Virus record (IMG/VR): IMGVR_UViG_3300042261_002385
Coordinates: 62,001 to 126,000 of that record
Direction: 5' to 3' (one strand)
DNA length: 64,000 nucleotides
Part shown: positions 365-23,417 of the stretch, one piece after another
Layout: every line of letters begins with the position of its first letter
Position numbering within the stretch: position 1 is the stretch's first letter
Position numbers and translations under genes: made by a program
Notes under the pieces: model-generated
The model's input: only the letters and a program-made list of their open reading frames with translations
The model's database searches: none
What the model was told of the DNA's origin: nothing

Positions 365-934
365 ATGAAACTATTTTTATTTTTGTTCTTACTTATTAGT
401 CTAAATGTTTTTAGTCAACACTCGTTTGAAATATGTGAAAATTCAAATACGTTTACATATTCAACCACAATTGACTTAAACGGAACAGTAGAATGGTTTT
501 TAAACGGTAGTTCAATTGGTCAGGGTCTTTCAATTGATATCACATATGATGAACCTGGAGAATTTCAATTAGTAGCAATGGGTTATAACGATTTAGGTTG
601 TCCAGGAACACCACAAGTTTTAGATATTATAGTTACTCAATGTGATCCACTTATTTATTGGGTTCCTAATTCATTCACACCTGATGGAAATGAATTTAAT
701 CAAACTTGGGGTCCTATATTGACAAGCGGTATTTCAGTTAATAATTTTTCACTAACAATTTATAATAGATGGGGAGCTATCATCTGGGAGTCCAAAGATG
801 TCAATACTAAATGGGATGGAACATATGGAGGTTTTTTAGTTCCAGATGGAACATACTCTTGGATTATGAAATTAGATATGATAGACAATGATGGTAAAAA
901 ATTAATTACCGGTCACGTTACAATCGTTAGATAA
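365..934 (+). CDS. Secreted protein with gliding-motility-associated C-terminal (T9SS type B sorting) domain
   Basis: N-terminal signal peptide; C-terminal VPNSFTPDGN..N..W...IYNRWG..IWES...WDGTY.G..VPDGTY...GHVTIVR. Confidence 0.85.
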   Translation: MKLFLFLFLLISLNVFSQHSFEICENSNTFTYSTTIDLNGTVEWFLNGSSIGQGLSIDITYDEPGEFQLVAMGYNDLGCPGTPQVLDIIVTQCDPLIYWVPNSFTPDGNEFNQTWGPILTSGISVNNFSLTIYNRWGAIIWESKDVNTKWDGTYGGFLVPDGTYSWIMKLDMIDNDGKKLITGHVTIVR

Positions 935-1011: not shown

Positions 1012-1338
1012 TTAATGACTATGTATTACATTTTCTATTTTCTCATACAGTTTTATTTTCGGTAATACACCAACTTGTCTATCAACTACTTCACCATTTT
1101 TAAAAAAGATTATTGTAGGAATTCCTCTTACCCCATATTTATCAGGACTGATTGGATTCTCATCAATGTTTACTTTATAAACCACAATTTTTTCTTCTAA
1201 ATCATTTGAAGCTTCTTCTAATGCTGGAGCTAATGCTTTACAAGGATTACACCAATCGGCCCAAAAATCGACTAAAATTAATTTATCTGAACTTTTAATT
1301 ATATCTTGAAAGTTATCATCTGTTATACTTGCTACCAT
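1012..1338 (-). CDS. trxA: Thioredoxin
   Basis: DFWADWCNPCK active site, GIPT motif. Confidence 0.92.
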   Translation of the reverse strand: MVASITDDNFQDIIKSSDKLILVDFWADWCNPCKALAPALEEASNDLEEKIVVYKVNIDENPISPDKYGVRGIPTIIFFKNGEVVDRQVGVLPKIKLYEKIENVIHSH

Positions 1339-1718: not shown

Positions 1719-1793
1719 TTGGAATGATAGGACTTGAACCTACGACCTCCACGGTATCAGCGTGGCGCTCTCGACCAACTGAGCTACATTCCA
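1719..1793 (-). tRNA. tRNA-Ile (GAT)
   Basis: CCACG-CTGATAC-CGTGG arm. Confidence 0.92.
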
Positions 1794-2205: not shown

Positions 2206-2290
2206 TCGGTAGAGTGGGATTTGAACCCACGTCGTGATTTCTCACCTAGTGTATCAGACTAGTCCCTGAAGACCGCTCGGGTATCTACCG
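2206..2290 (-). tRNA. tRNA with Ile (GAT) anticodon and a long variable arm
   Basis: CGGTAGA/TCTACCG acceptor; CTAGT-CTGATAC-ACTAG arm; GTGA-GAAA-TCAC variable arm. Confidence 0.85.
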
Positions 2291-2824
2291 TAATCTTTCT
2301 AACCTTTTTTCTTCTTCTATATTATAATGTATTTCCCCATGGCAATTTCTACACACTAAAATACATTTATCAACTTCATTTTTTAATTTTTCAAAAGAAT
2401 GAGTTTTCCCACTTACTGAAAAATCTTTTTCTTTTGGGTTTCTATGATGAAATTCTAAAGATGATATACATTTATTATATCCACATAATTCACATTCACC
2501 ACCTTTATATTCAACTAGTCTAATCTTAACTCTTCTTCTCCATTCAATTACACTTTGAGAATTAGATTTTGATTCACTATAACTTCTATCTTTATACTTT
2601 TTGACAGTACTTATAGAAACGTTAAACTTTTCTGAAGCTTCTTTTATTGTATGTGTTTTACAATAGTTTTTTAACTCTTCTATATCAAATCTTCTTTCAG
2701 AATTTAATCCATATCTTTTACAATGATAACTAATTGTTGATTTTGATATGTTTAATTCTTTTTTTATTTCATCATAACTTTTACCTTCTTTTCTTAATTT
2801 TATTACTTTATCTTTAGTTTCCAT
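2285..2824 (-). CDS. HTH-containing HNH endonuclease (free-standing homing endonuclease-like)
   Basis: Two HTH-like segments, then CELCG...LEFHH...CILVCRNCHGEIH. Confidence 0.8.
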   Translation of the reverse strand: METKDKVIKLRKEGKSYDEIKKELNISKSTISYHCKRYGLNSERRFDIEELKNYCKTHTIKEASEKFNVSISTVKKYKDRSYSESKSNSQSVIEWRRRVKIRLVEYKGGECELCGYNKCISSLEFHHRNPKEKDFSVSGKTHSFEKLKNEVDKCILVCRNCHGEIHYNIEEEKRLERLR

Positions 2825-6630: not shown

Positions 6631-6706
6631 TGGACCAGATGGGAATCGAACCCACCACACCTACCTTGCAAGGGTAAGTCGCCGAAGCCTTGGAACATGC
6701 TAGCCC
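6631..6706 (-). tRNA. tRNA-Ala (TGC)
   Basis: G3:U70 pair; TTACC-CTTGCAA-GGTAG arm; atypical D arm. Confidence 0.88.
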
Positions 6707-6793: not shown

Positions 6794-6874
6794 TCGGCAA
6801 GGTGGGATTCGAACCCACGTTTTCAACTTCCCGCTACGTGTATAGAATGTATAAGATTCCAACGGTACTTGCCG
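6794..6874 (-). tRNA. Non-canonical tRNA-like RNA with a TAT (Ile AUA) anticodon-like loop
   Basis: Perfect CGGCAAG/CTTGCCG acceptor and T arm; GGAAT-CTTATAC-ATTCT hairpin sits where the D arm should be. Confidence 0.6.
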
Positions 6875-7067: not shown

Positions 7068-7150
7068 TTGGAAGGGAGGGATTCGAACCCCCGTACTCGT
7101 AAGAGAACAGATTTACAGTCTGTCGGTTTTAGCCACTCACCCACCTTCCA
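7068..7150 (-). tRNA. tRNA-Tyr (GTA)
   Basis: ACAGA-CTGTAAA-TCTGT arm, long variable arm. Confidence 0.93.
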
Positions 7151-12517: not shown

Positions 12518-12603
12518 CGGAGAACAGAGGAATTGAACCCCACACAAATGAACGTGCAACTCGCTTAGCAGGCGGTCCTAATCACCAGATTAGTTTATTC
12601 TCC
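12518..12603 (-). tRNA. tRNA-Ser (GCT), 8/4 fold
   Basis: CGC-CTGCTAA-GCG; CTAATC-TGGT-GATTAG D arm; G73. Confidence 0.82.
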
Positions 12604-12609
12604 ATTTAG

Positions 12610-12693
12610 CGGAAGAAGTAGGTGTCGATCCCAATACCTTTCAGTACCCACAGTTTTCAAGACTGGGTTGCAGGCCGCTGCAATTCATCTTCC
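12610..12693 (-). tRNA. tRNA-Ser (TGA), 8/4 fold
   Basis: CAGT-CTTGAAA-ACTG; TTGCAG-CGGC-CTGCAA D arm; G73. Confidence 0.82.
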
Positions 12694-12780: not shown

Positions 12781-12908
12781 CGGGGATGGTTGGACTCGAA
12801 CCAACGACCTTATAATTTCAAAATATACGAAGTAACTCTTTCAATCAACACTCTTACGAGGTAAAGTTTCAAAAGAGATAGTTTTCTCTACCACTGAGCT
12901 AAATCCCC
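12781..12908 (-). ncRNA. 128-nt tRNA-like RNA with a large structured insertion in the anticodon domain
   Basis: Near-canonical acceptor, D arm (GCTCAGTGGTAGAG) and T arm (GTTGG-TTCGAGT-CCAAC) flank about 55 extra nt. Confidence 0.7.
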
Positions 12909-12999: not shown

Positions 13000-13087
13000 T
13001 GCACCCAGAAGGACTCGAACCTTCAACGGACTTTCGTCTACCCCTCGCATTAAAAGTGCGATGCTCTACCAATTGAGCCATAGGTGC
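13000..13087 (-). tRNA. tRNA-Lys (TTT) with long variable arm
   Basis: TCGCA-CTTTTAA-TGCGA arm; 20-nt variable region containing GAC-GAAA-GTC. Confidence 0.85.
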
Positions 13088-13100
13088 TTAATTACCTTAG

Positions 13101-13173
13101 TGACCCCGGCGAGAATCGAACTCGCGACCCCCTGGTTAAAAGCCAGGTGCTCTACCTACTAAGCTACGAAGTC
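13101..13173 (-). tRNA. tRNA-Lys (TTT)
   Basis: CCTGG-CTTTTAA-CCAGG arm. Confidence 0.93.
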
Positions 13174-21267: not shown

Positions 21268-21600
21268 TTATATTTTATATTTATATTCATTAAATTCACC
21301 TCGTCTATATTCATATAAAACAGTTATATTATCTTCTAAAACTACATTTTTATCTTCTAAAACATTGTCAATTTGACAATTCCTTCTTTCATCTTTTGGA
21401 TAAACATTTATCTCGACTTTATAATCTTTTATTAAATTAGAATCGACTAATCTATTTTGTATTTGTTTAGATATAAGTTCTCTAAGTTCTGCTTGTTTGT
21501 ATCCAGACTTATTAAATTTAATATGATTTGGATATTCTATACAGAAAAATTCAATAATATTTCTGACATAATCCAATTCTATTTCAGCGAGTGTTTTCAT
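21268..21600 (-). CDS. Hypothetical protein
   Basis: ORF in operon. Confidence 0.6.
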   Translation of the reverse strand: MKTLAEIELDYVRNIIEFFCIEYPNHIKFNKSGYKQAELRELISKQIQNRLVDSNLIKDYKVEINVYPKDERRNCQIDNVLEDKNVVLEDNITVLYEYRRGEFNEYKYKI

Positions 21601-23417
21601 TTAAGTAAATCTTCTAATTCCTCAACCGTTAAAATTGTAATTCCAAGTGAGATAGCCTTTGTTTCTTTTGAAGAACCAGAACCTTTAGACTTCATAACCA
21701 AGTGTGTTGTGTTTTTAGAAACAGAACCACCGATTAAACCACCTCTACTAACAATAACTTCTTCTAAATCTTTTCTACGAACACCAGTGAAAACAAATTG
21801 TTTTCCATCTAAGTCATTTCCAGTTTTTACAACCTCTACTTTTTCAGAAATAGTGATAGGTAAGTCTTTTACAAAGTTAAAGAATTCATCATAACTATCA
21901 ATATAAGATTTAGCAGAAATCTCAGCAAATCCTTCGATTGCCATAACCTGGTCAATAGTTGGTTTAGTAACAAAATCTTCTAACAATAACAATTTCTTAC
22001 TACCTAAACCTTTAAAGATACCAGTAGCGTGTTGTAGTTTAGATAAACTCACATTAGTGACTGATTTCTGAATTGAGTCATAGACAATCTTTGCTTTACG
22101 TTTTCCAAATCGCTCAATCTTCTCTAAGTCAGAAGTTGTTAGTGAAAGAATATCCTTAATAGTTTTATATCCAGCATCCCACAGTTGAGTGATAACTCCT
22201 TCAGAAACATTATCAGCTTCTAAAATTTCAAAGAAAGAGATATTCTTTTTTAATTTTTGTTCATCAGTTTCGGTCAATGTCACCAACTCAACACCATTTT
22301 CATTCCAATCGATGTTATCGACATCAGGCATTTGAAATTCAACCGGTGTAACAACATCAGCGATAATTGGAATAACCATTCCACTTCGTTTTACAACAAC
22401 TTTTGCTCCAATACCAATACCCATATCTTTTACAAAACGGGCGTTGTTACCAGTCACATTAGATACAGTAACTCCGTCTAATTTAACAGGACTAATGTGT
22501 AGGGTAGGTTTAAGATAACCTTGTTTTGAAATATTCCAAGAGATACCGATAATTTCAGTTTCTGCAGATTGTTCAAAAGAAGGATGTTTGAAGGCTCTTG
22601 CCCAAACAGGATTATTTGATGAGGTTTCACGACCTAAAGTCATTTGAGTATTAAGATCATTAATTTCAATGATTAAACCATCGATTTCATAATCAACAGA
22701 ATATTCGTGAAAAAGGTTGATAAGAAGTTCTTCTGTAATATCAGAAATTCTACAGATATGGTAAGGAACTTTAATACTTTGACTTGAATTAAGTTCGTCT
22801 ATAATTTGTTTTTTTGATTGAAATGTATTTTTTGATTGAATAGCTCCATATTTGATGTAGCTACAATCTGTTAAAGCTTGAGTTGCTTCTTTTGAATTGA
22901 GAAGACCAGCAACTAAATTACGTGGATTTGCAAAATCGTTTGAATACTTTTCTAAAAAAGTTTTCTTAGACATCATCACTTCACCATAGGTAAAAGTGAA
23001 AGTAGGTTTAGTTAAATGATTGTCAATAAGAGCATAGTGTTCATTTGACTTCTGACCAGTAGTGCCATCACCTCGAGTCCAAGCTTCTGATGTTGATTCA
23101 TTTACACATAAAGAAAGACCATCATATTTAGGTGTGATGATAACAAAATTGTGAGTTTGTATGTTTTTTAGTCGACACCAATCCTTAATGTCATCCATGG
23201 ATTTAATTTTGTTCATCGAAGCCATCTCAATTGGTAACTTTGACTTACGAGATTCATCTGTGATAGAGTGTCCTACTTTAGATAGTAGTTCATCATTAGG
23301 AGAAAGTAGTTCTAATTCTTCAATTAATTGGTCATATTCTCTATCAGAGATAATTGGGTTACCCAATCTATAAGCTTCGTTAGCTTTTACAATCTTTTCC
23401 TTTAAGTCATTAATCAT
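21597..23417 (-). CDS. ligA: NAD-dependent DNA ligase
   Basis: KYDG adenylation motif, NPRN, IDG, OB fold, HhH, C-terminal BRCT. Confidence 0.95.
   Translation of the reverse strand: MINDLKEKIVKANEAYRLGNPIISDREYDQLIEELELLSPNDELLSKVGHSITDESRKSKLPIEMASMNKIKSMDDIKDWCRLKNIQTHNFVIITPKYDGLSLCVNESTSEAWTRGDGTTGQKSNEHYALIDNHLTKPTFTFTYGEVMMSKKTFLEKYSNDFANPRNLVAGLLNSKEATQALTDCSYIKYGAIQSKNTFQSKKQIIDELNSSQSIKVPYHICRISDITEELLINLFHEYSVDYEIDGLIIEINDLNTQMTLGRETSSNNPVWARAFKHPSFEQSAETEIIGISWNISKQGYLKPTLHISPVKLDGVTVSNVTGNNARFVKDMGIGIGAKVVVKRSGMVIPIIADVVTPVEFQMPDVDNIDWNENGVELVTLTETDEQKLKKNISFFEILEADNVSEGVITQLWDAGYKTIKDILSLTTSDLEKIERFGKRKAKIVYDSIQKSVTNVSLSKLQHATGIFKGLGSKKLLLLEDFVTKPTIDQVMAIEGFAEISAKSYIDSYDEFFNFVKDLPITISEKVEVVKTGNDLDGKQFVFTGVRRKDLEEVIVSRGGLIGGSVSKNTTHLVMKSKGSGSSKETKAISLGITILTVEELEDLLK

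What the first reader, a model, noticed from the sequence alone, without database searches (positions are those of the whole stretch)
2206..2290. Class II (long variable arm) tRNA carrying an Ile anticodon
Long variable arms are normally limited to Leu, Ser, Tyr and Sec. This gene has a GAT anticodon, a 4-bp GAAA-capped variable arm and A73, and sits in the same cluster as a normal tRNA-Ile(GAT). It could be charged by LeuRS (as reported in vitro for nematode nev-tRNAs) or be a nuclease-evading scaffold.
Basis: partly seen in the sequence, partly recalled or inferred. Interest (0 to 1): 0.65.

Follow-up and report, generated by a model that had tools for sequence, protein, structure and literature searches.

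The report
Phage tRNA-Ile on a tyrosine-type scaffold
A huge freshwater phage carries, beside a normal isoleucine tRNA, a second, well-conserved isoleucine-anticodon tRNA built on the long-armed body of a tyrosine tRNA. It is one of several such re-bodied tRNAs in these phages, which may help them escape tRNA-cutting host defences.

Summary
On the minus strand, 2290->2206 is a class II tRNA with a 7-bp acceptor stem, a 3-bp D stem, anticodon GAU, a 4-bp GAAA-capped variable arm and A73. ARAGORN calls it and Rfam tRNA scores it 51.8 bits.

It is not a one-off. I found 30 distinct variants in 54 viral or freshwater-metagenome loci and none in one-genome-per-species bacterial contigs. 99.6% of pair cells are paired. 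17 of 24 pairs show compensatory changes, including all four variable-arm pairs. GAU and A73 never vary.

The body is tyrosine-like. A Bacteroidota tRNA-Tyr model gives 53 bits and a class I tRNA-Ile model 34 bits.

Leucylation as in nematode nev-tRNAs is unlikely. I infer charging with Ile by the host IleRS. The major Ile elements are present and the key Tyr element U35 is lost. Sibling long-armed Asn, Cys, Thr and Lys tRNAs keep the discriminator of their own isotype. AUU/AUC codons sit at I/V/L positions in conserved proteins.

The same phages hold long-armed copies of Lys(UUU), Asn(GUU) and Thr(UGU), the three main tRNA targets of the PARIS nuclease AriB, and short-armed Leu and Tyr. Evasion of tRNA-targeting defence by swapping the scaffold is plausible but untested. 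Expression and charging are not shown.

The parts
2206..2290 (-). Class II (long variable arm) tRNA with anticodon GAU and A73. The anticodon is at 2255-2253, the variable-arm hairpin at 2245-2234 and the discriminator at 2206.
   Evidence: ARAGORN; Rfam tRNA 51.8 bits; covariation in 30 homologues; Tyr model 53.2 bits against class I Ile model 34.3 bits.
1719..1793 (-). Canonical class I tRNA-Ile(GAU) of the same array. It has the same anticodon loop, CUGAUAC.
   Evidence: ARAGORN; Rfam 71.7 bits; class I Ile model R3 84.4 bits.
7068..7150 (-). The phage's own class II tRNA-Tyr(GUA), with U1-A72. It is a scaffold relative of the GAU tRNA.
   Evidence: ARAGORN; group A model 54.3 bits; Tyr model 88.4 bits.
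6794..6874 (-). tRNA-like sibling with nearly the same acceptor stem and T arm as the GAU tRNA. Its anticodon loop is CUUAUAC (UAU, Ile AUA codon) and its D region is aberrant. ARAGORN does not call it.
   Evidence: Group A model 38.5 bits with alignment; sequence and fold; homologues in L108, L117 and L015 with compensatory changes in the anticodon stem.
13000..13087 (-). tRNA-Lys(UUU) with a class I body plus an inserted GAAA-capped hairpin in the variable region. It lies next to a canonical tRNA-Lys(UUU) at 13101-13173. This is a second case of the same phenomenon in the window.
   Evidence: ARAGORN, 89 nt; Rfam 66.3 bits with a 16-nt insertion in the variable region; homologues in viral contigs whose arm stems covary.
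2285..2824 (-). HNH homing-type endonuclease ORF directly upstream. Its last 6 nt overlap the 5' end of the tRNA.
   Evidence: phrog_2255 96 bits; Pfam HTH and weak HNH. It is syntenic only in L001, L004, L009 and L091, so it is a sporadic passenger and not part of the tRNA's function.

Best explanation
This is a genuine, selectively maintained phage tRNA gene. Its body (D arm, variable-arm geometry, A73) is that of a bacterial, Bacteroidota-type tRNA-Tyr. Its anticodon loop has been remoulded from CUGUAAA to CUGAUAC. I infer that it is transcribed with the surrounding tRNA array and processed, that the host adds CCA, and that the host IleRS charges it with isoleucine. IleRS relies mainly on the anticodon GAU, on A37 (expected to carry t6A) and on A73. 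The tRNA would then read AUU/AUC alongside the canonical copy. It is one member of a set of 're-bodied' tRNAs in these freshwater huge phages. That set holds long-armed Ile, Lys, Asn, Thr, Cys and Glu tRNAs and short-armed Leu and Tyr tRNAs. The most likely advantage is that a tRNA with a foreign scaffold still serves the ribosome but is no longer recognised by a factor that reads the body of the host-type tRNA, most plausibly a tRNA-cleaving defence nuclease. Shown here: the structure, the conservation, the tyrosine-like scaffold, the restriction to phage-type contigs and the pairing with a canonical copy. Inferred: Ile charging and defence evasion.
For: The gene is real.

Conservation: there are 30 distinct variants in 54 loci, with 17 of 24 pairs compensatory and all four variable-arm pairs covarying. 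GAU, CUGAUA and A73 are invariant.

Phage restriction: no group A member occurs among the 38 hits in one-genome-per-species bacterial contigs, and every group A locus is a tRNA array.

Tyrosine scaffold: the 19 best non-self hits of the group A model are all tRNA-Tyr. The window tRNA scores 53.2 bits on the Tyr model and 34.3 bits on the class I Ile model.

Ile identity:
- The strong Ile determinants, anticodon and discriminator, are present, as is A37, where t6A is a strong determinant. The critical Tyr determinant U35 is absent (review PMC9976931).
- Long-armed siblings carry the discriminator of their own isotype: Ile A 30/30, Asn G 9/12, Cys U 3/3, Thr U 2/2. This holds even where they share one variable-arm and T-arm module, as in L090.
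- A sibling with the second Ile anticodon, UAU, shares the acceptor stem and T arm.
- AUU and AUC codons align with I/V/L in thioredoxin and in NAD-ligase.
- 35 of 53 loci hold both a long and a short Ile(GAU).

Defence angle:
- AriB of PARIS cleaves Lys(UUU), Thr(UGU) and Asn(GUU), and phage T5 supplies resistant variants of exactly these three (PMC12409363). The same anticodons have long-armed paralogues here.
- Both phage Ile copies have C38 where host-type Bacteroidota tRNA-Ile has A38.
Against: There is no evidence of expression or aminoacylation. The RNA-library contigs did not clearly cover 2206-2290. The only spanning contig is from a library whose RNA status is a guess.

The minor E. 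coli Ile determinants (C4-G69, 12-23, C29-G41, D-loop G16/D20/D21) are absent, so IleRS might charge it poorly. The phage's canonical copy also lacks the 4-69 and 29-41 determinants.

G34 and A73 are retained on a tyrosine body, so some tyrosylation cannot be excluded.

No tRNA nuclease that targets tRNA-Ile, and no defence system of the unknown host, was identified. The link to defence is by analogy only.

The isotype comparison used few Ser (10) and Leu (4) references against 27 Tyr.
Confidence: 0.55

Rival explanations
1. Host TyrRS charges it with tyrosine, because the body, G34 and A73 are tyrosine-like. It would then insert Tyr at AUU/AUC as deliberate or tolerated mistranslation.
For: The Tyr model scores it 53 bits, more than any non-Tyr cellular tRNA tested. 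A73 and G34 are kept. The phage's own tRNA-Tyr also lacks G1-C72, so the 1-72 pair does not rule out TyrRS.
Against: U35, described as critical for tyrosylation, is replaced by A (PMC9976931). AUU and AUC codons align with I/V/L and never notably with Y. Tyr-scaffold siblings with the Asn anticodon have moved their discriminator from A to G, the Asn element, which indicates identity switching. A canonical tRNA-Ile competes for the same codons.
Confidence: 0.1
2. LeuRS charges it with leucine, as reported in vitro for nematode nev-tRNAs.
For: It is class II and has A73. Bacterial LeuRS does not read the anticodon (established knowledge). nev-tRNA-Ile(UAU) is leucylated in vitro (PMC3333845, PMC4300185).
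Against: The D arm is of the CCCGAGCGG tyrosine type, not the GGAAUUGGUAGAC type of Bacteroidota and phage tRNA-Leu. tRNA-Leu scores at most 43.3 bits on the group A model. Three unpaired bases follow the arm, as in Tyr; Leu has two. AUU aligns with I 23%, L 21% and V 17%, whereas the Leu codon UUA aligns with L 34% and I 7%.
Confidence: 0.07
3. It is not used in translation. It acts as a tRNA-shaped decoy or sponge, for example for an anticodon nuclease or another tRNA-binding host factor.
For: There are no expression or charging data. An invariant anticodon loop would also be expected of a decoy for an enzyme that reads the anticodon. A redundant canonical copy exists.
Against: Every feature needed for aminoacylation and ribosome use is conserved: 7/5 acceptor/T geometry, the G18G19 and T-loop motifs, A73, U33 and a purine at 37. 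The discriminator tracks the isotype across the long-armed siblings, which a decoy would not need.
Confidence: 0.15
4. It is simply an extra gene copy for heavily used AUU/AUC codons. It arose by anticodon mutation of a duplicated tRNA-Tyr, and the long arm has no adaptive meaning.
For: AUU and AUC together make up 48 per 1000 codons in 128 long ORFs. The other long-armed isotypes also serve abundant A/U-rich codons: AAA 57, AAU 50 and ACA 31 per 1000. Phage tRNA arrays duplicate and recombine freely.
Against: The arm stem is kept by compensatory substitutions in all four pairs over 30 variants. The same class switch recurs in several isotypes and runs in both directions: long Ile, Lys, Asn and Thr, and short Leu and Tyr. 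That looks like selection for being different from the host.
Confidence: 0.13

Closest known systems
Bacterial (Bacteroidota-type) tRNA-Tyr(GUA), class II
   Same: U8 A9, a 3-bp D stem with a 13.22 mismatch, a GAGYGG-type D loop, a short variable arm often capped by GAAA and followed by three unpaired bases, A73, and 7/5 geometry. It is the best covariance-model match in both directions.
   Different: The anticodon is GAU, not GUA, and the loop ends in C38. Pair 1-72 is C-G, U-A or A-U and never G-C. The arm stem has 4 full pairs with no unpaired 5' base.
Nematode nev-tRNAs (PMC3333845, PMC4300185)
   Same: They are class II tRNAs that carry anticodons of class I amino acids, including Ile (UAU). 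They are conserved in a lineage and sit beside normal isoacceptors.
   Different: They are eukaryotic nuclear genes, are leucylated in vitro, and cause no detectable mistranslation in vivo. The tRNA here is phage-encoded, has a tyrosine-type body and the anticodon GAU, and its sibling pattern suggests cognate charging.
allo-tRNAs and (8/4) tRNA-Ser/His of bacteria and phages (Mukai et al., PMC5389517)
   Same: They are non-canonical long-armed tRNAs, some in phage tRNA clusters, and many carry non-Ser anticodons, with UAU among the commonest.
   Different: allo-tRNAs have 8/4 or 9/3 acceptor/T geometry and serine- or alanine-type identity. This tRNA has the canonical 7/5 geometry and A73. This window does also carry two Sec-like tRNA-Ser genes, at 12518-12604 and 12611-12693.
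Phage T5 tRNA-Lys(UUU)/Thr(UGU)/Asn(GUU) variants that neutralise PARIS, and other phage tRNAs that evade tRNA-targeting defences (PMC11464382, PMC12409363, PMC10264068, PMC11555353)
   Same: These are phage-encoded paralogues of host tRNAs with the same anticodon but altered sequence. The isotypes overlap (Lys UUU, Thr UGU, Asn GUU). Changes at position 38 and in the D loop occur here too.
   Different: The known cases escape through a few point substitutions near the cleavage site. Here the whole scaffold class is exchanged. No nuclease, resistance or host is known for this case.
Type I (short-arm) tRNA-Leu of Streptomyces (PMC6614811)
   Same: It shows that a synthetase can serve both classes of scaffold for one amino acid. 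Short-armed tRNA-Leu also occurs in the relatives of this phage.
   Different: The switch runs the opposite way (class II to class I), the tRNA is cellular, and it involves LeuRS, which does not read the anticodon.

Membership tests
tRNA (Rfam RF00005) | Cloverleaf that scores above the family gathering score, with the T-loop and D-loop GG motifs | tested here: met
   51.8 bits against a gathering score of 29, with a full-length match. ARAGORN calls it.
Class II (type II) tRNA | Variable region of 10 or more nt that forms a stem-loop | tested here: met
   The variable region is 15 nt with a 4-bp stem and a GAAA loop. All four pairs covary across 30 variants.
Class II (type II) tRNA | Anticodon of Leu, Ser, Tyr or Sec | tested here: not met
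   The anticodon GAU (Ile) is invariant in 30 variants.
Canonical bacterial tRNA-Ile(GAU) | Anticodon GAU, a purine at 37 after U36, and discriminator A73 (the strong IleRS determinants) | tested here: met
   All are present and invariant. The determinants are taken from PMC9976931.
Canonical bacterial tRNA-Ile(GAU) | Class I body: 4-bp D stem, 5-nt variable loop, similarity to the tRNA-Ile family | tested here: not met
   It has a 3-bp D stem and a 15-nt arm. The class I Ile model scores it 34.3 bits, against 81-95 bits for true copies and 50-75 bits for many non-Ile class I tRNAs.
Canonical bacterial tRNA-Ile(GAU) | Charged with isoleucine by IleRS | not testable with these tools
   This needs an aminoacylation assay. 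It is inferred only from identity elements and from the discriminator pattern of the siblings.
Bacterial tRNA-Tyr | Class II body with A73 | tested here: met
   The Tyr model scores it 53.2 bits, and the 19 best hits of the reciprocal model are all tRNA-Tyr.
Bacterial tRNA-Tyr | U35 in a GUA anticodon; G1-C72 | tested here: not met
   It has A35. Pair 1-72 is C-G in 19 variants, U-A in 7 and A-U in 4, and never G-C. Note that the phage's own tRNA-Tyr also has U1-A72.
nev-tRNA | Nematode nuclear gene with a leucine-type class II body, leucylated by LeuRS | tested here: not met
   It lies in a phage contig. The D arm and the arm geometry are not of the Leu type, and tRNA-Leu scores at most 43.3 bits. 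Leucylation itself cannot be tested here.
allo-tRNA / (8/4) tRNA | 12-bp acceptor branch split 8/4 or 9/3 | tested here: not met
   The acceptor stem has 7 bp and the T stem 5 bp, and both are supported by covariation.
Phage anti-defence tRNA (T5 tRNA-Lys type) | Phage-encoded, with the same anticodon as a host tRNA and a sequence diverged from the host copy | tested here: met
   It lies in a virus record. A canonical copy and host-type tRNA-Ile are available for comparison.
Phage anti-defence tRNA (T5 tRNA-Lys type) | Resists a defined tRNA nuclease and rescues infection | not testable with these tools
   The host and the nuclease are unknown. The only support is analogy with the PARIS targets.

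The most novel reading that the evidence does not exclude
These freshwater huge phages systematically exchange the structural class of their tRNAs. They put a variable arm and a tyrosine-type core on Ile, Lys, Asn, Thr, Cys and Glu tRNAs, and they remove the arm from some Leu and Tyr tRNAs. Anticodon and discriminator are kept, so the host synthetases still charge these tRNAs correctly. The result is a partly 'shape-orthogonal' tRNA set that tRNA-targeting immune nucleases cannot recognise, or that a phage nuclease aimed at host tRNAs can spare. That would be a new principle of counter-defence and a natural demonstration that class I synthetase substrates tolerate class II scaffolds.
Probability: 0.35. 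Interest if true: 0.85.

Novelty: new variant of a known kind. Interest (0 to 1): 0.72.

Why it matters
Textbook tRNA biology limits long variable arms in bacteria to Leu, Ser, Tyr and Sec. A conserved 7/5 class II tRNA with an Ile anticodon, kept in dozens of phage lineages, breaks that rule. It is one of a family of re-bodied Lys, Asn, Thr and Cys tRNAs.

If IleRS charges it, identity can be moved wholesale onto a foreign scaffold in nature. That would give ready-made chassis for engineering tRNAs.

If the scaffold swap blocks tRNA-cleaving defences, phage escape extends from point mutations to exchange of the whole tRNA architecture. The known examples of such defences are the PARIS, PrrC, retron and Schlafen types. 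It would also give a sequence signature for finding such arms races in metagenomes.

If it is mischarged instead, it would be a phage-borne case of ambiguous decoding.

Tried and rejected
**Searches for relatives**
- Megablast and blastn of the tRNA and its array against 50,697 phage records found only short T-arm or single-tRNA matches. No related genome was found.
- BLAST of the tRNA against 201 Bacteroidota genomes gave T-arm matches only, to Met, His, Pro and Ser tRNAs. I found no cellular full-length homologue.

**A phage-encoded synthetase partner.** Pfam tRNA-synt_1 (Ile/Leu/Val/Met), tRNA-synt_1b (Tyr/Trp) and tRNA-synt_2b (Ser/Thr/Pro/His/Gly) were not found in the 436-kb genome. I therefore dropped the idea of an orthogonal phage pair. 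The 974-aa ORF between the tRNA clusters has no Pfam or PHROG match.

**tRNA maturation or repair enzymes.** Neither a CCA-adding enzyme nor RtcB was found.

**Expression.** One search for sequencing runs and one laying of reads were inconclusive. True metatranscriptome contigs cover other tRNAs of the array but not 2206-2290, apart from a 35-nt edge. The one spanning contig comes from a library of uncertain type.

**Listing all tRNAs of five Bacteroidota genomes** to harvest class II references was truncated before most class II entries. I replaced it with targeted BLAST fetches.

**Literature.** Seven full-text searches found no description of a 7/5 class II tRNA-Ile(GAU) or of long-armed Lys, Asn or Thr tRNAs in phages. 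This library lacks most subscription journals.

**The upstream HNH endonuclease.** I rejected it as a functional partner because it is syntenic in only 4 of 53 loci.

A script that held typed protein letters came back unrun. I redid the step from references only.

Full report
**What is there**

The window is bases 62,001-126,000 of a single 436,265-bp contig with 31% G+C. The collection holds it as a virus record about 95% complete. It carries several arrays of tRNA genes on the minus strand. ARAGORN finds 22 in the window and 28 in the genome.

At 2290->2206 on the minus strand, ARAGORN calls an 86-nt tRNA-Ile(gat). The Rfam tRNA model matches it from end to end at 51.8 bits, against a gathering score of 29. 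Read from the sequence, its parts are:
- a 7-bp acceptor stem
- U8 A9
- a 3-bp D stem (CCC/GGG) with a G13.A22 mismatch and a 10-nt loop between them, beginning AGCGG
- a 5-bp anticodon stem with loop CUGAUAC
- a variable arm GUGA-GAAA-UCAC followed by GAC
- a normal T arm
- A73, with no encoded CCA

A normal class I tRNA-Ile(GAU) lies at 1719-1793 in the same array. The only thing missing was the strand.

**It is a conserved family, restricted to phage-type contigs**

I searched for a pattern made of three parts: the Ser/Tyr-type D-loop motif, the loop CUGATA, and a T loop far enough downstream to force a long arm. It found 17 viral contigs, 38 contigs of the one-genome-per-species bacterial collection and, in a narrower form, 43 metagenome contigs. 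The hits fall into two groups.

- **Group A** are homologues of the window tRNA. There are 54 loci with 30 distinct sequences. All lie in viral or freshwater-metagenome contigs, always inside tRNA arrays, and none is in the bacterial genomes.
- **Group B** is unrelated: serine-type bodies with the anticodon GAU (see 'Other things seen' below).

On the alignment of the 30 group A variants:
- 99.6% of pair cells are standard pairs.
- 17 of 24 pairs show changes on both sides.
- Every one of the four variable-arm pairs covaries, for example GUGA/UCAC, AUAC/GUAU, ACAC/GUGU and GCGC/GCGC.
- No shuffle or slid register comes near these values.
- The anticodon GAU, the first six loop bases CUGAUA, G18G19 and A73 never vary.

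This is a functional RNA under selection for the whole class II cloverleaf.

**Whose body is it?**

The phage encodes none of the synthetase families tRNA-synt_1, 1b or 2b, so a host enzyme must charge the tRNA. An ORF with a type IX secretion CHU_C domain at 365-934 points to a Bacteroidota host. The runs that hold this DNA are lake, lagoon and other aquatic metagenomes.

I fetched class II and Ile tRNAs from Bacteroidota genomes. A covariance model of group A was searched against 78 sources. It ranks tRNA-Tyr first. The 19 best non-self hits are all tRNA-Tyr.

| Reference tRNA | Bits on the group A model |
|---|---|
| Bacteroidota tRNA-Tyr | 46.5-60.5 |
| The phage's own tRNA-Tyr | 54.3 |
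| tRNA-Ser | at most 51.8 |
| Canonical tRNA-Ile (shares the anticodon loop) | at most 45.5 |
| tRNA-Leu | at most 43.3 |

The reverse test agrees.

| Model | Window tRNA | Rest of group A |
|---|---|---|
| 18 Bacteroidota tRNA-Tyr | 53.2 bits | 46.9-58.6 bits |
| 19 class I tRNA-Ile(GAU) | 34.3 bits | 29-40 bits |

The score on the class I Ile model is lower than for dozens of Val, Met, Lys and Phe tRNAs.

The anatomy agrees as well. Bacteroidota tRNA-Tyr has U8 A9, a D stem of the form CC(A/C/G), a D loop of the form (A/G)AG(C/U)GG, a short arm that is sometimes GAAA-capped and is followed by three unpaired bases, and A73. Bacteroidota tRNA-Ser has one unpaired base after a 6-bp arm and a different D arm. 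tRNA-Leu has the D loop GGAAUUGGUAGAC and two unpaired bases. The reference sets are uneven (27 Tyr, 10 Ser, 4 Leu), which limits this comparison somewhat.

**Which amino acid?**

Nothing here measures charging. What follows is inference.

According to the identity review PMC9976931:
- Ile identity rests on strong determinants in the anticodon and the discriminator, plus t6A37. There are minor elements in three stem pairs and in the D loop.
- Tyr identity rests critically on A73 and U35, with G1-C72 in bacteria.

Group A keeps GAU, U36-A37 and A73. It has lost U35 and never has G1-C72. The last point is weak, because the phage's own tRNA-Tyr also has U1-A72.

Three further observations favour cognate (Ile) charging.

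1. *The discriminator follows the isotype.* The same phage arrays hold long-armed versions of other class I isotypes, some on the same tyrosine-type scaffold. Contig L090 has long Asn(GUU), Ile(GAU) and Cys(GCA) genes in a row. They share one variable-arm and T-arm module, yet their discriminators are G, A and U. Over all unique sequences, the long versions carry the discriminator of their short partners: Ile A 30/30, Asn G 9/12, Cys U 3/3, Thr U 2/2, and Lys, Glu and Val A. If one class II synthetase charged them all, a single discriminator would be expected.
2. *A sibling carries the other Ile anticodon.* A tRNA-like gene at 6794-6874 has almost the same acceptor stem and T arm as group A but the anticodon UAU. 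It is conserved with compensatory changes in three other contigs. One scaffold lineage therefore serves both Ile anticodons.
3. *AUU and AUC codons behave as Ile codons.*
   - In thioredoxin they fall at I/V/L positions, including the invariant Ile of the GIPT motif.
   - In the NAD-dependent ligase, aligned with 20 Bacteroidota LigA proteins, AUU aligns with I 23%, L 21% and V 17%, and AUC with I 26%, V 26% and L 14%.
   - Tyr is not among the six residues most often aligned with either codon.
   - The Leu codon UUA gives L 34% and I 7%.

This excludes wholesale reassignment. It does not exclude low-level ambiguity.

From general knowledge, not tested here: class I synthetases such as IleRS approach the tRNA with the variable region facing solvent, so an extra arm need not clash with the enzyme.

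**Why would a phage keep it?**

Group A is the commonest member of a wider pattern. In the 53 group-A-bearing loci (625 tRNAs, 422 unique) I counted these class-switched unique sequences (sequences):

| Version | Isotype and number of unique sequences |
|---|---|
| Long-armed (81 nt or more) | Asn(GUU) 12, Cys 3, Glu 2, Thr(UGU) 2; Gly, Lys(UUU), Met and Val one each |
| Short (class I-like) | Leu 17, Tyr 2 |

35 of the 53 loci hold both a long and a short Ile(GAU).

The window itself has a second case. The tRNA-Lys(UUU) at 13000-13087 has a class I body with an inserted GAAA-capped hairpin, and it lies beside a normal copy at 13101-13173. Its homologues in other large viral contigs keep the hairpin through covarying stems.

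The isotypes match published work. The PARIS nuclease AriB cleaves Lys(UUU), Thr(UGU) and Asn(GUU), and phage T5 escapes with its own variants of exactly these three. Those variants are altered near the cleavage site and in the D loop (PMC12409363; see also PMC11464382, PMC10264068, PMC11555353). Both phage Ile copies also differ from host-type Bacteroidota tRNA-Ile at position 38, with C where the host has A.

I therefore think the likeliest rationale is evasion of a tRNA-body-reading factor by scaffold exchange. No nuclease, no host and no resistance are known for this case. Simple supply of abundant A/U-rich codons remains a fair alternative: AUU and AUC together 48, AAA 57 and AAU 50 per 1000 codons.

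**What could not be settled**

- Expression. Contigs of RNA libraries cover other tRNAs of the array. The only one that spans 2087-2291 comes from a library whose RNA status is a guess.
- Prior description. Seven full-text searches found no description of such a tRNA. The library is incomplete.

**Comparison with known kinds**

- It works like an ordinary elongator tRNA-Ile but fails the body test for that family.
- It has the body of tRNA-Tyr but fails on the anticodon.
- It resembles nev-tRNAs in concept only.
- It is not an allo-tRNA, because its geometry is 7/5 with covariation support.
- It fits the concept of phage anti-defence tRNAs, but by a mechanism not yet described and not tested here.

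I rate it a new variant of a known kind.

**Other things seen**

- Group B. These are serine-type bodies (a GGCCGAGYGG-type D arm, often G73, some with encoded CCA) whose loop reads CTGATA where tRNA-Ser(GCU) reads CTGCTA. There are 7 in viral contigs and 36 in bacterial contigs from soil and aquatic lineages.
- The phage's tRNA-Ser genes are Sec-like, with 6-bp D stems. They lie at 12518-12604 (GCU) and 12611-12693 (UGA). ARAGORN misses both. This kind is known from phages (PMC5389517).
- A tRNA-Ala(UGC)-like gene with G3.U70 and an odd D arm lies at 6631-6706.
- An HNH endonuclease gene abuts the 5' end of the tRNA. It is syntenic in only 4 of 53 loci.

Noticed in passing
window 12518-12604 (-) and 12611-12693 (-): Two tRNA genes that ARAGORN misses. 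They match the Rfam tRNA-Sec model (47.1 and 41.3 bits), have 6-bp D stems and long arms, and carry serine anticodons GCU and UGA. They are probably the phage's only tRNA-Ser genes and resemble the (8/4) tRNA-Ser reported from phages.
   Followed up: partly
window 13000-13087 (-), beside 13101-13173 (-): A tRNA-Lys(UUU) with a class I body plus an inserted GAAA-capped hairpin in the variable region, next to a canonical copy. Homologues in other large viral contigs (L189, L192, L194-L196, L198, L202-L205, L207, L210, L212, L213) keep the hairpin with covarying stems.
   Followed up: partly
window 6794-6874 (-): A tRNA-like gene with nearly the acceptor stem and T arm of the class II Ile tRNA and anticodon loop CUUAUAC (UAU). 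It has no normal D arm, and a D-loop-like AGCGGG motif lies 3' of the anticodon arm. It is conserved in L108, L117 and L015 with compensatory changes in the anticodon stem. Its fold is unclear.
   Followed up: partly
window 6631-6706 (-): A tRNA-Ala(UGC)-like sequence with G3.U70 and A73 but an irregular D arm. ARAGORN does not call it and it scores below the Rfam threshold. A weak YrlA (Y RNA-like) match overlaps it.
   Followed up: no
window 12781-12908 (-): A 128-nt stretch that matches the class I tRNA model end to end (30.1 bits). ARAGORN in intron mode gives a doubtful tRNA-Glu(UUC) with a 44-nt insertion. Similar 128-nt matches occur at L001:4110-4237 and L097:5425-5553.
   Followed up: no
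G000:C1:37118-37204 (-), outside the window: A class II, tyrosine-like tRNA with an 8-nt anticodon loop. ARAGORN reports it as Thr|Tyr with the four-base anticodon agta.
   Followed up: no
L003, L005, L007, L008, L010, L013, L017 (viral) and L018-L055 (bacterial genome contigs): Serine-type class II tRNAs (GGCCGAGYGG-type D arm, often G73, some with encoded CCA) whose anticodon reads GAU. This is one base from the Ser anticodon GCU. They occur in 36 genome contigs of Acidobacteriota, Gemmatimonadota, Planctomycetota, Kofleriaceae, Pseudomonas, Agrobacterium, Cohnella and others. They could be missense tRNAs or decayed copies.
   Followed up: partly
L002:7470-7543, L006:1578-1651, L016:1196-1269 and 1283-1356, L014:512-587: Relatives of this phage encode short tRNA-Leu (74 nt, 5-nt variable loop) and a 76-nt tRNA-Tyr beside normal long-armed ones. 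This is the reverse class switch.
   Followed up: partly
L090:5088-5602 (-): Three long-armed tRNAs in a row, Asn(GUU), Ile(GAU) and Cys(GCA). They share one variable-arm and T-arm module but have discriminators G, A and U. This suggests modular recombination between neighbouring tRNA genes.
   Followed up: partly
window 2285-2824 (-): An HNH endonuclease ORF (phrog_2255, 96 bits) whose 3' end overlaps the first 6 nt of the class II tRNA. It is 70% identical and syntenic in L001, L004, L009 and L091, and elsewhere or absent in the other arrays. It is probably a homing endonuclease that rides in tRNA clusters.
   Followed up: yes
window 1012-1338 (-), 365-934 (+), 21597-23417 (-): The phage encodes a thioredoxin (113 bits), a protein with a type IX secretion CHU_C sorting domain (a hint of a Bacteroidota host) and an NAD-dependent DNA ligase with a BRCT domain.
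   Followed up: partly
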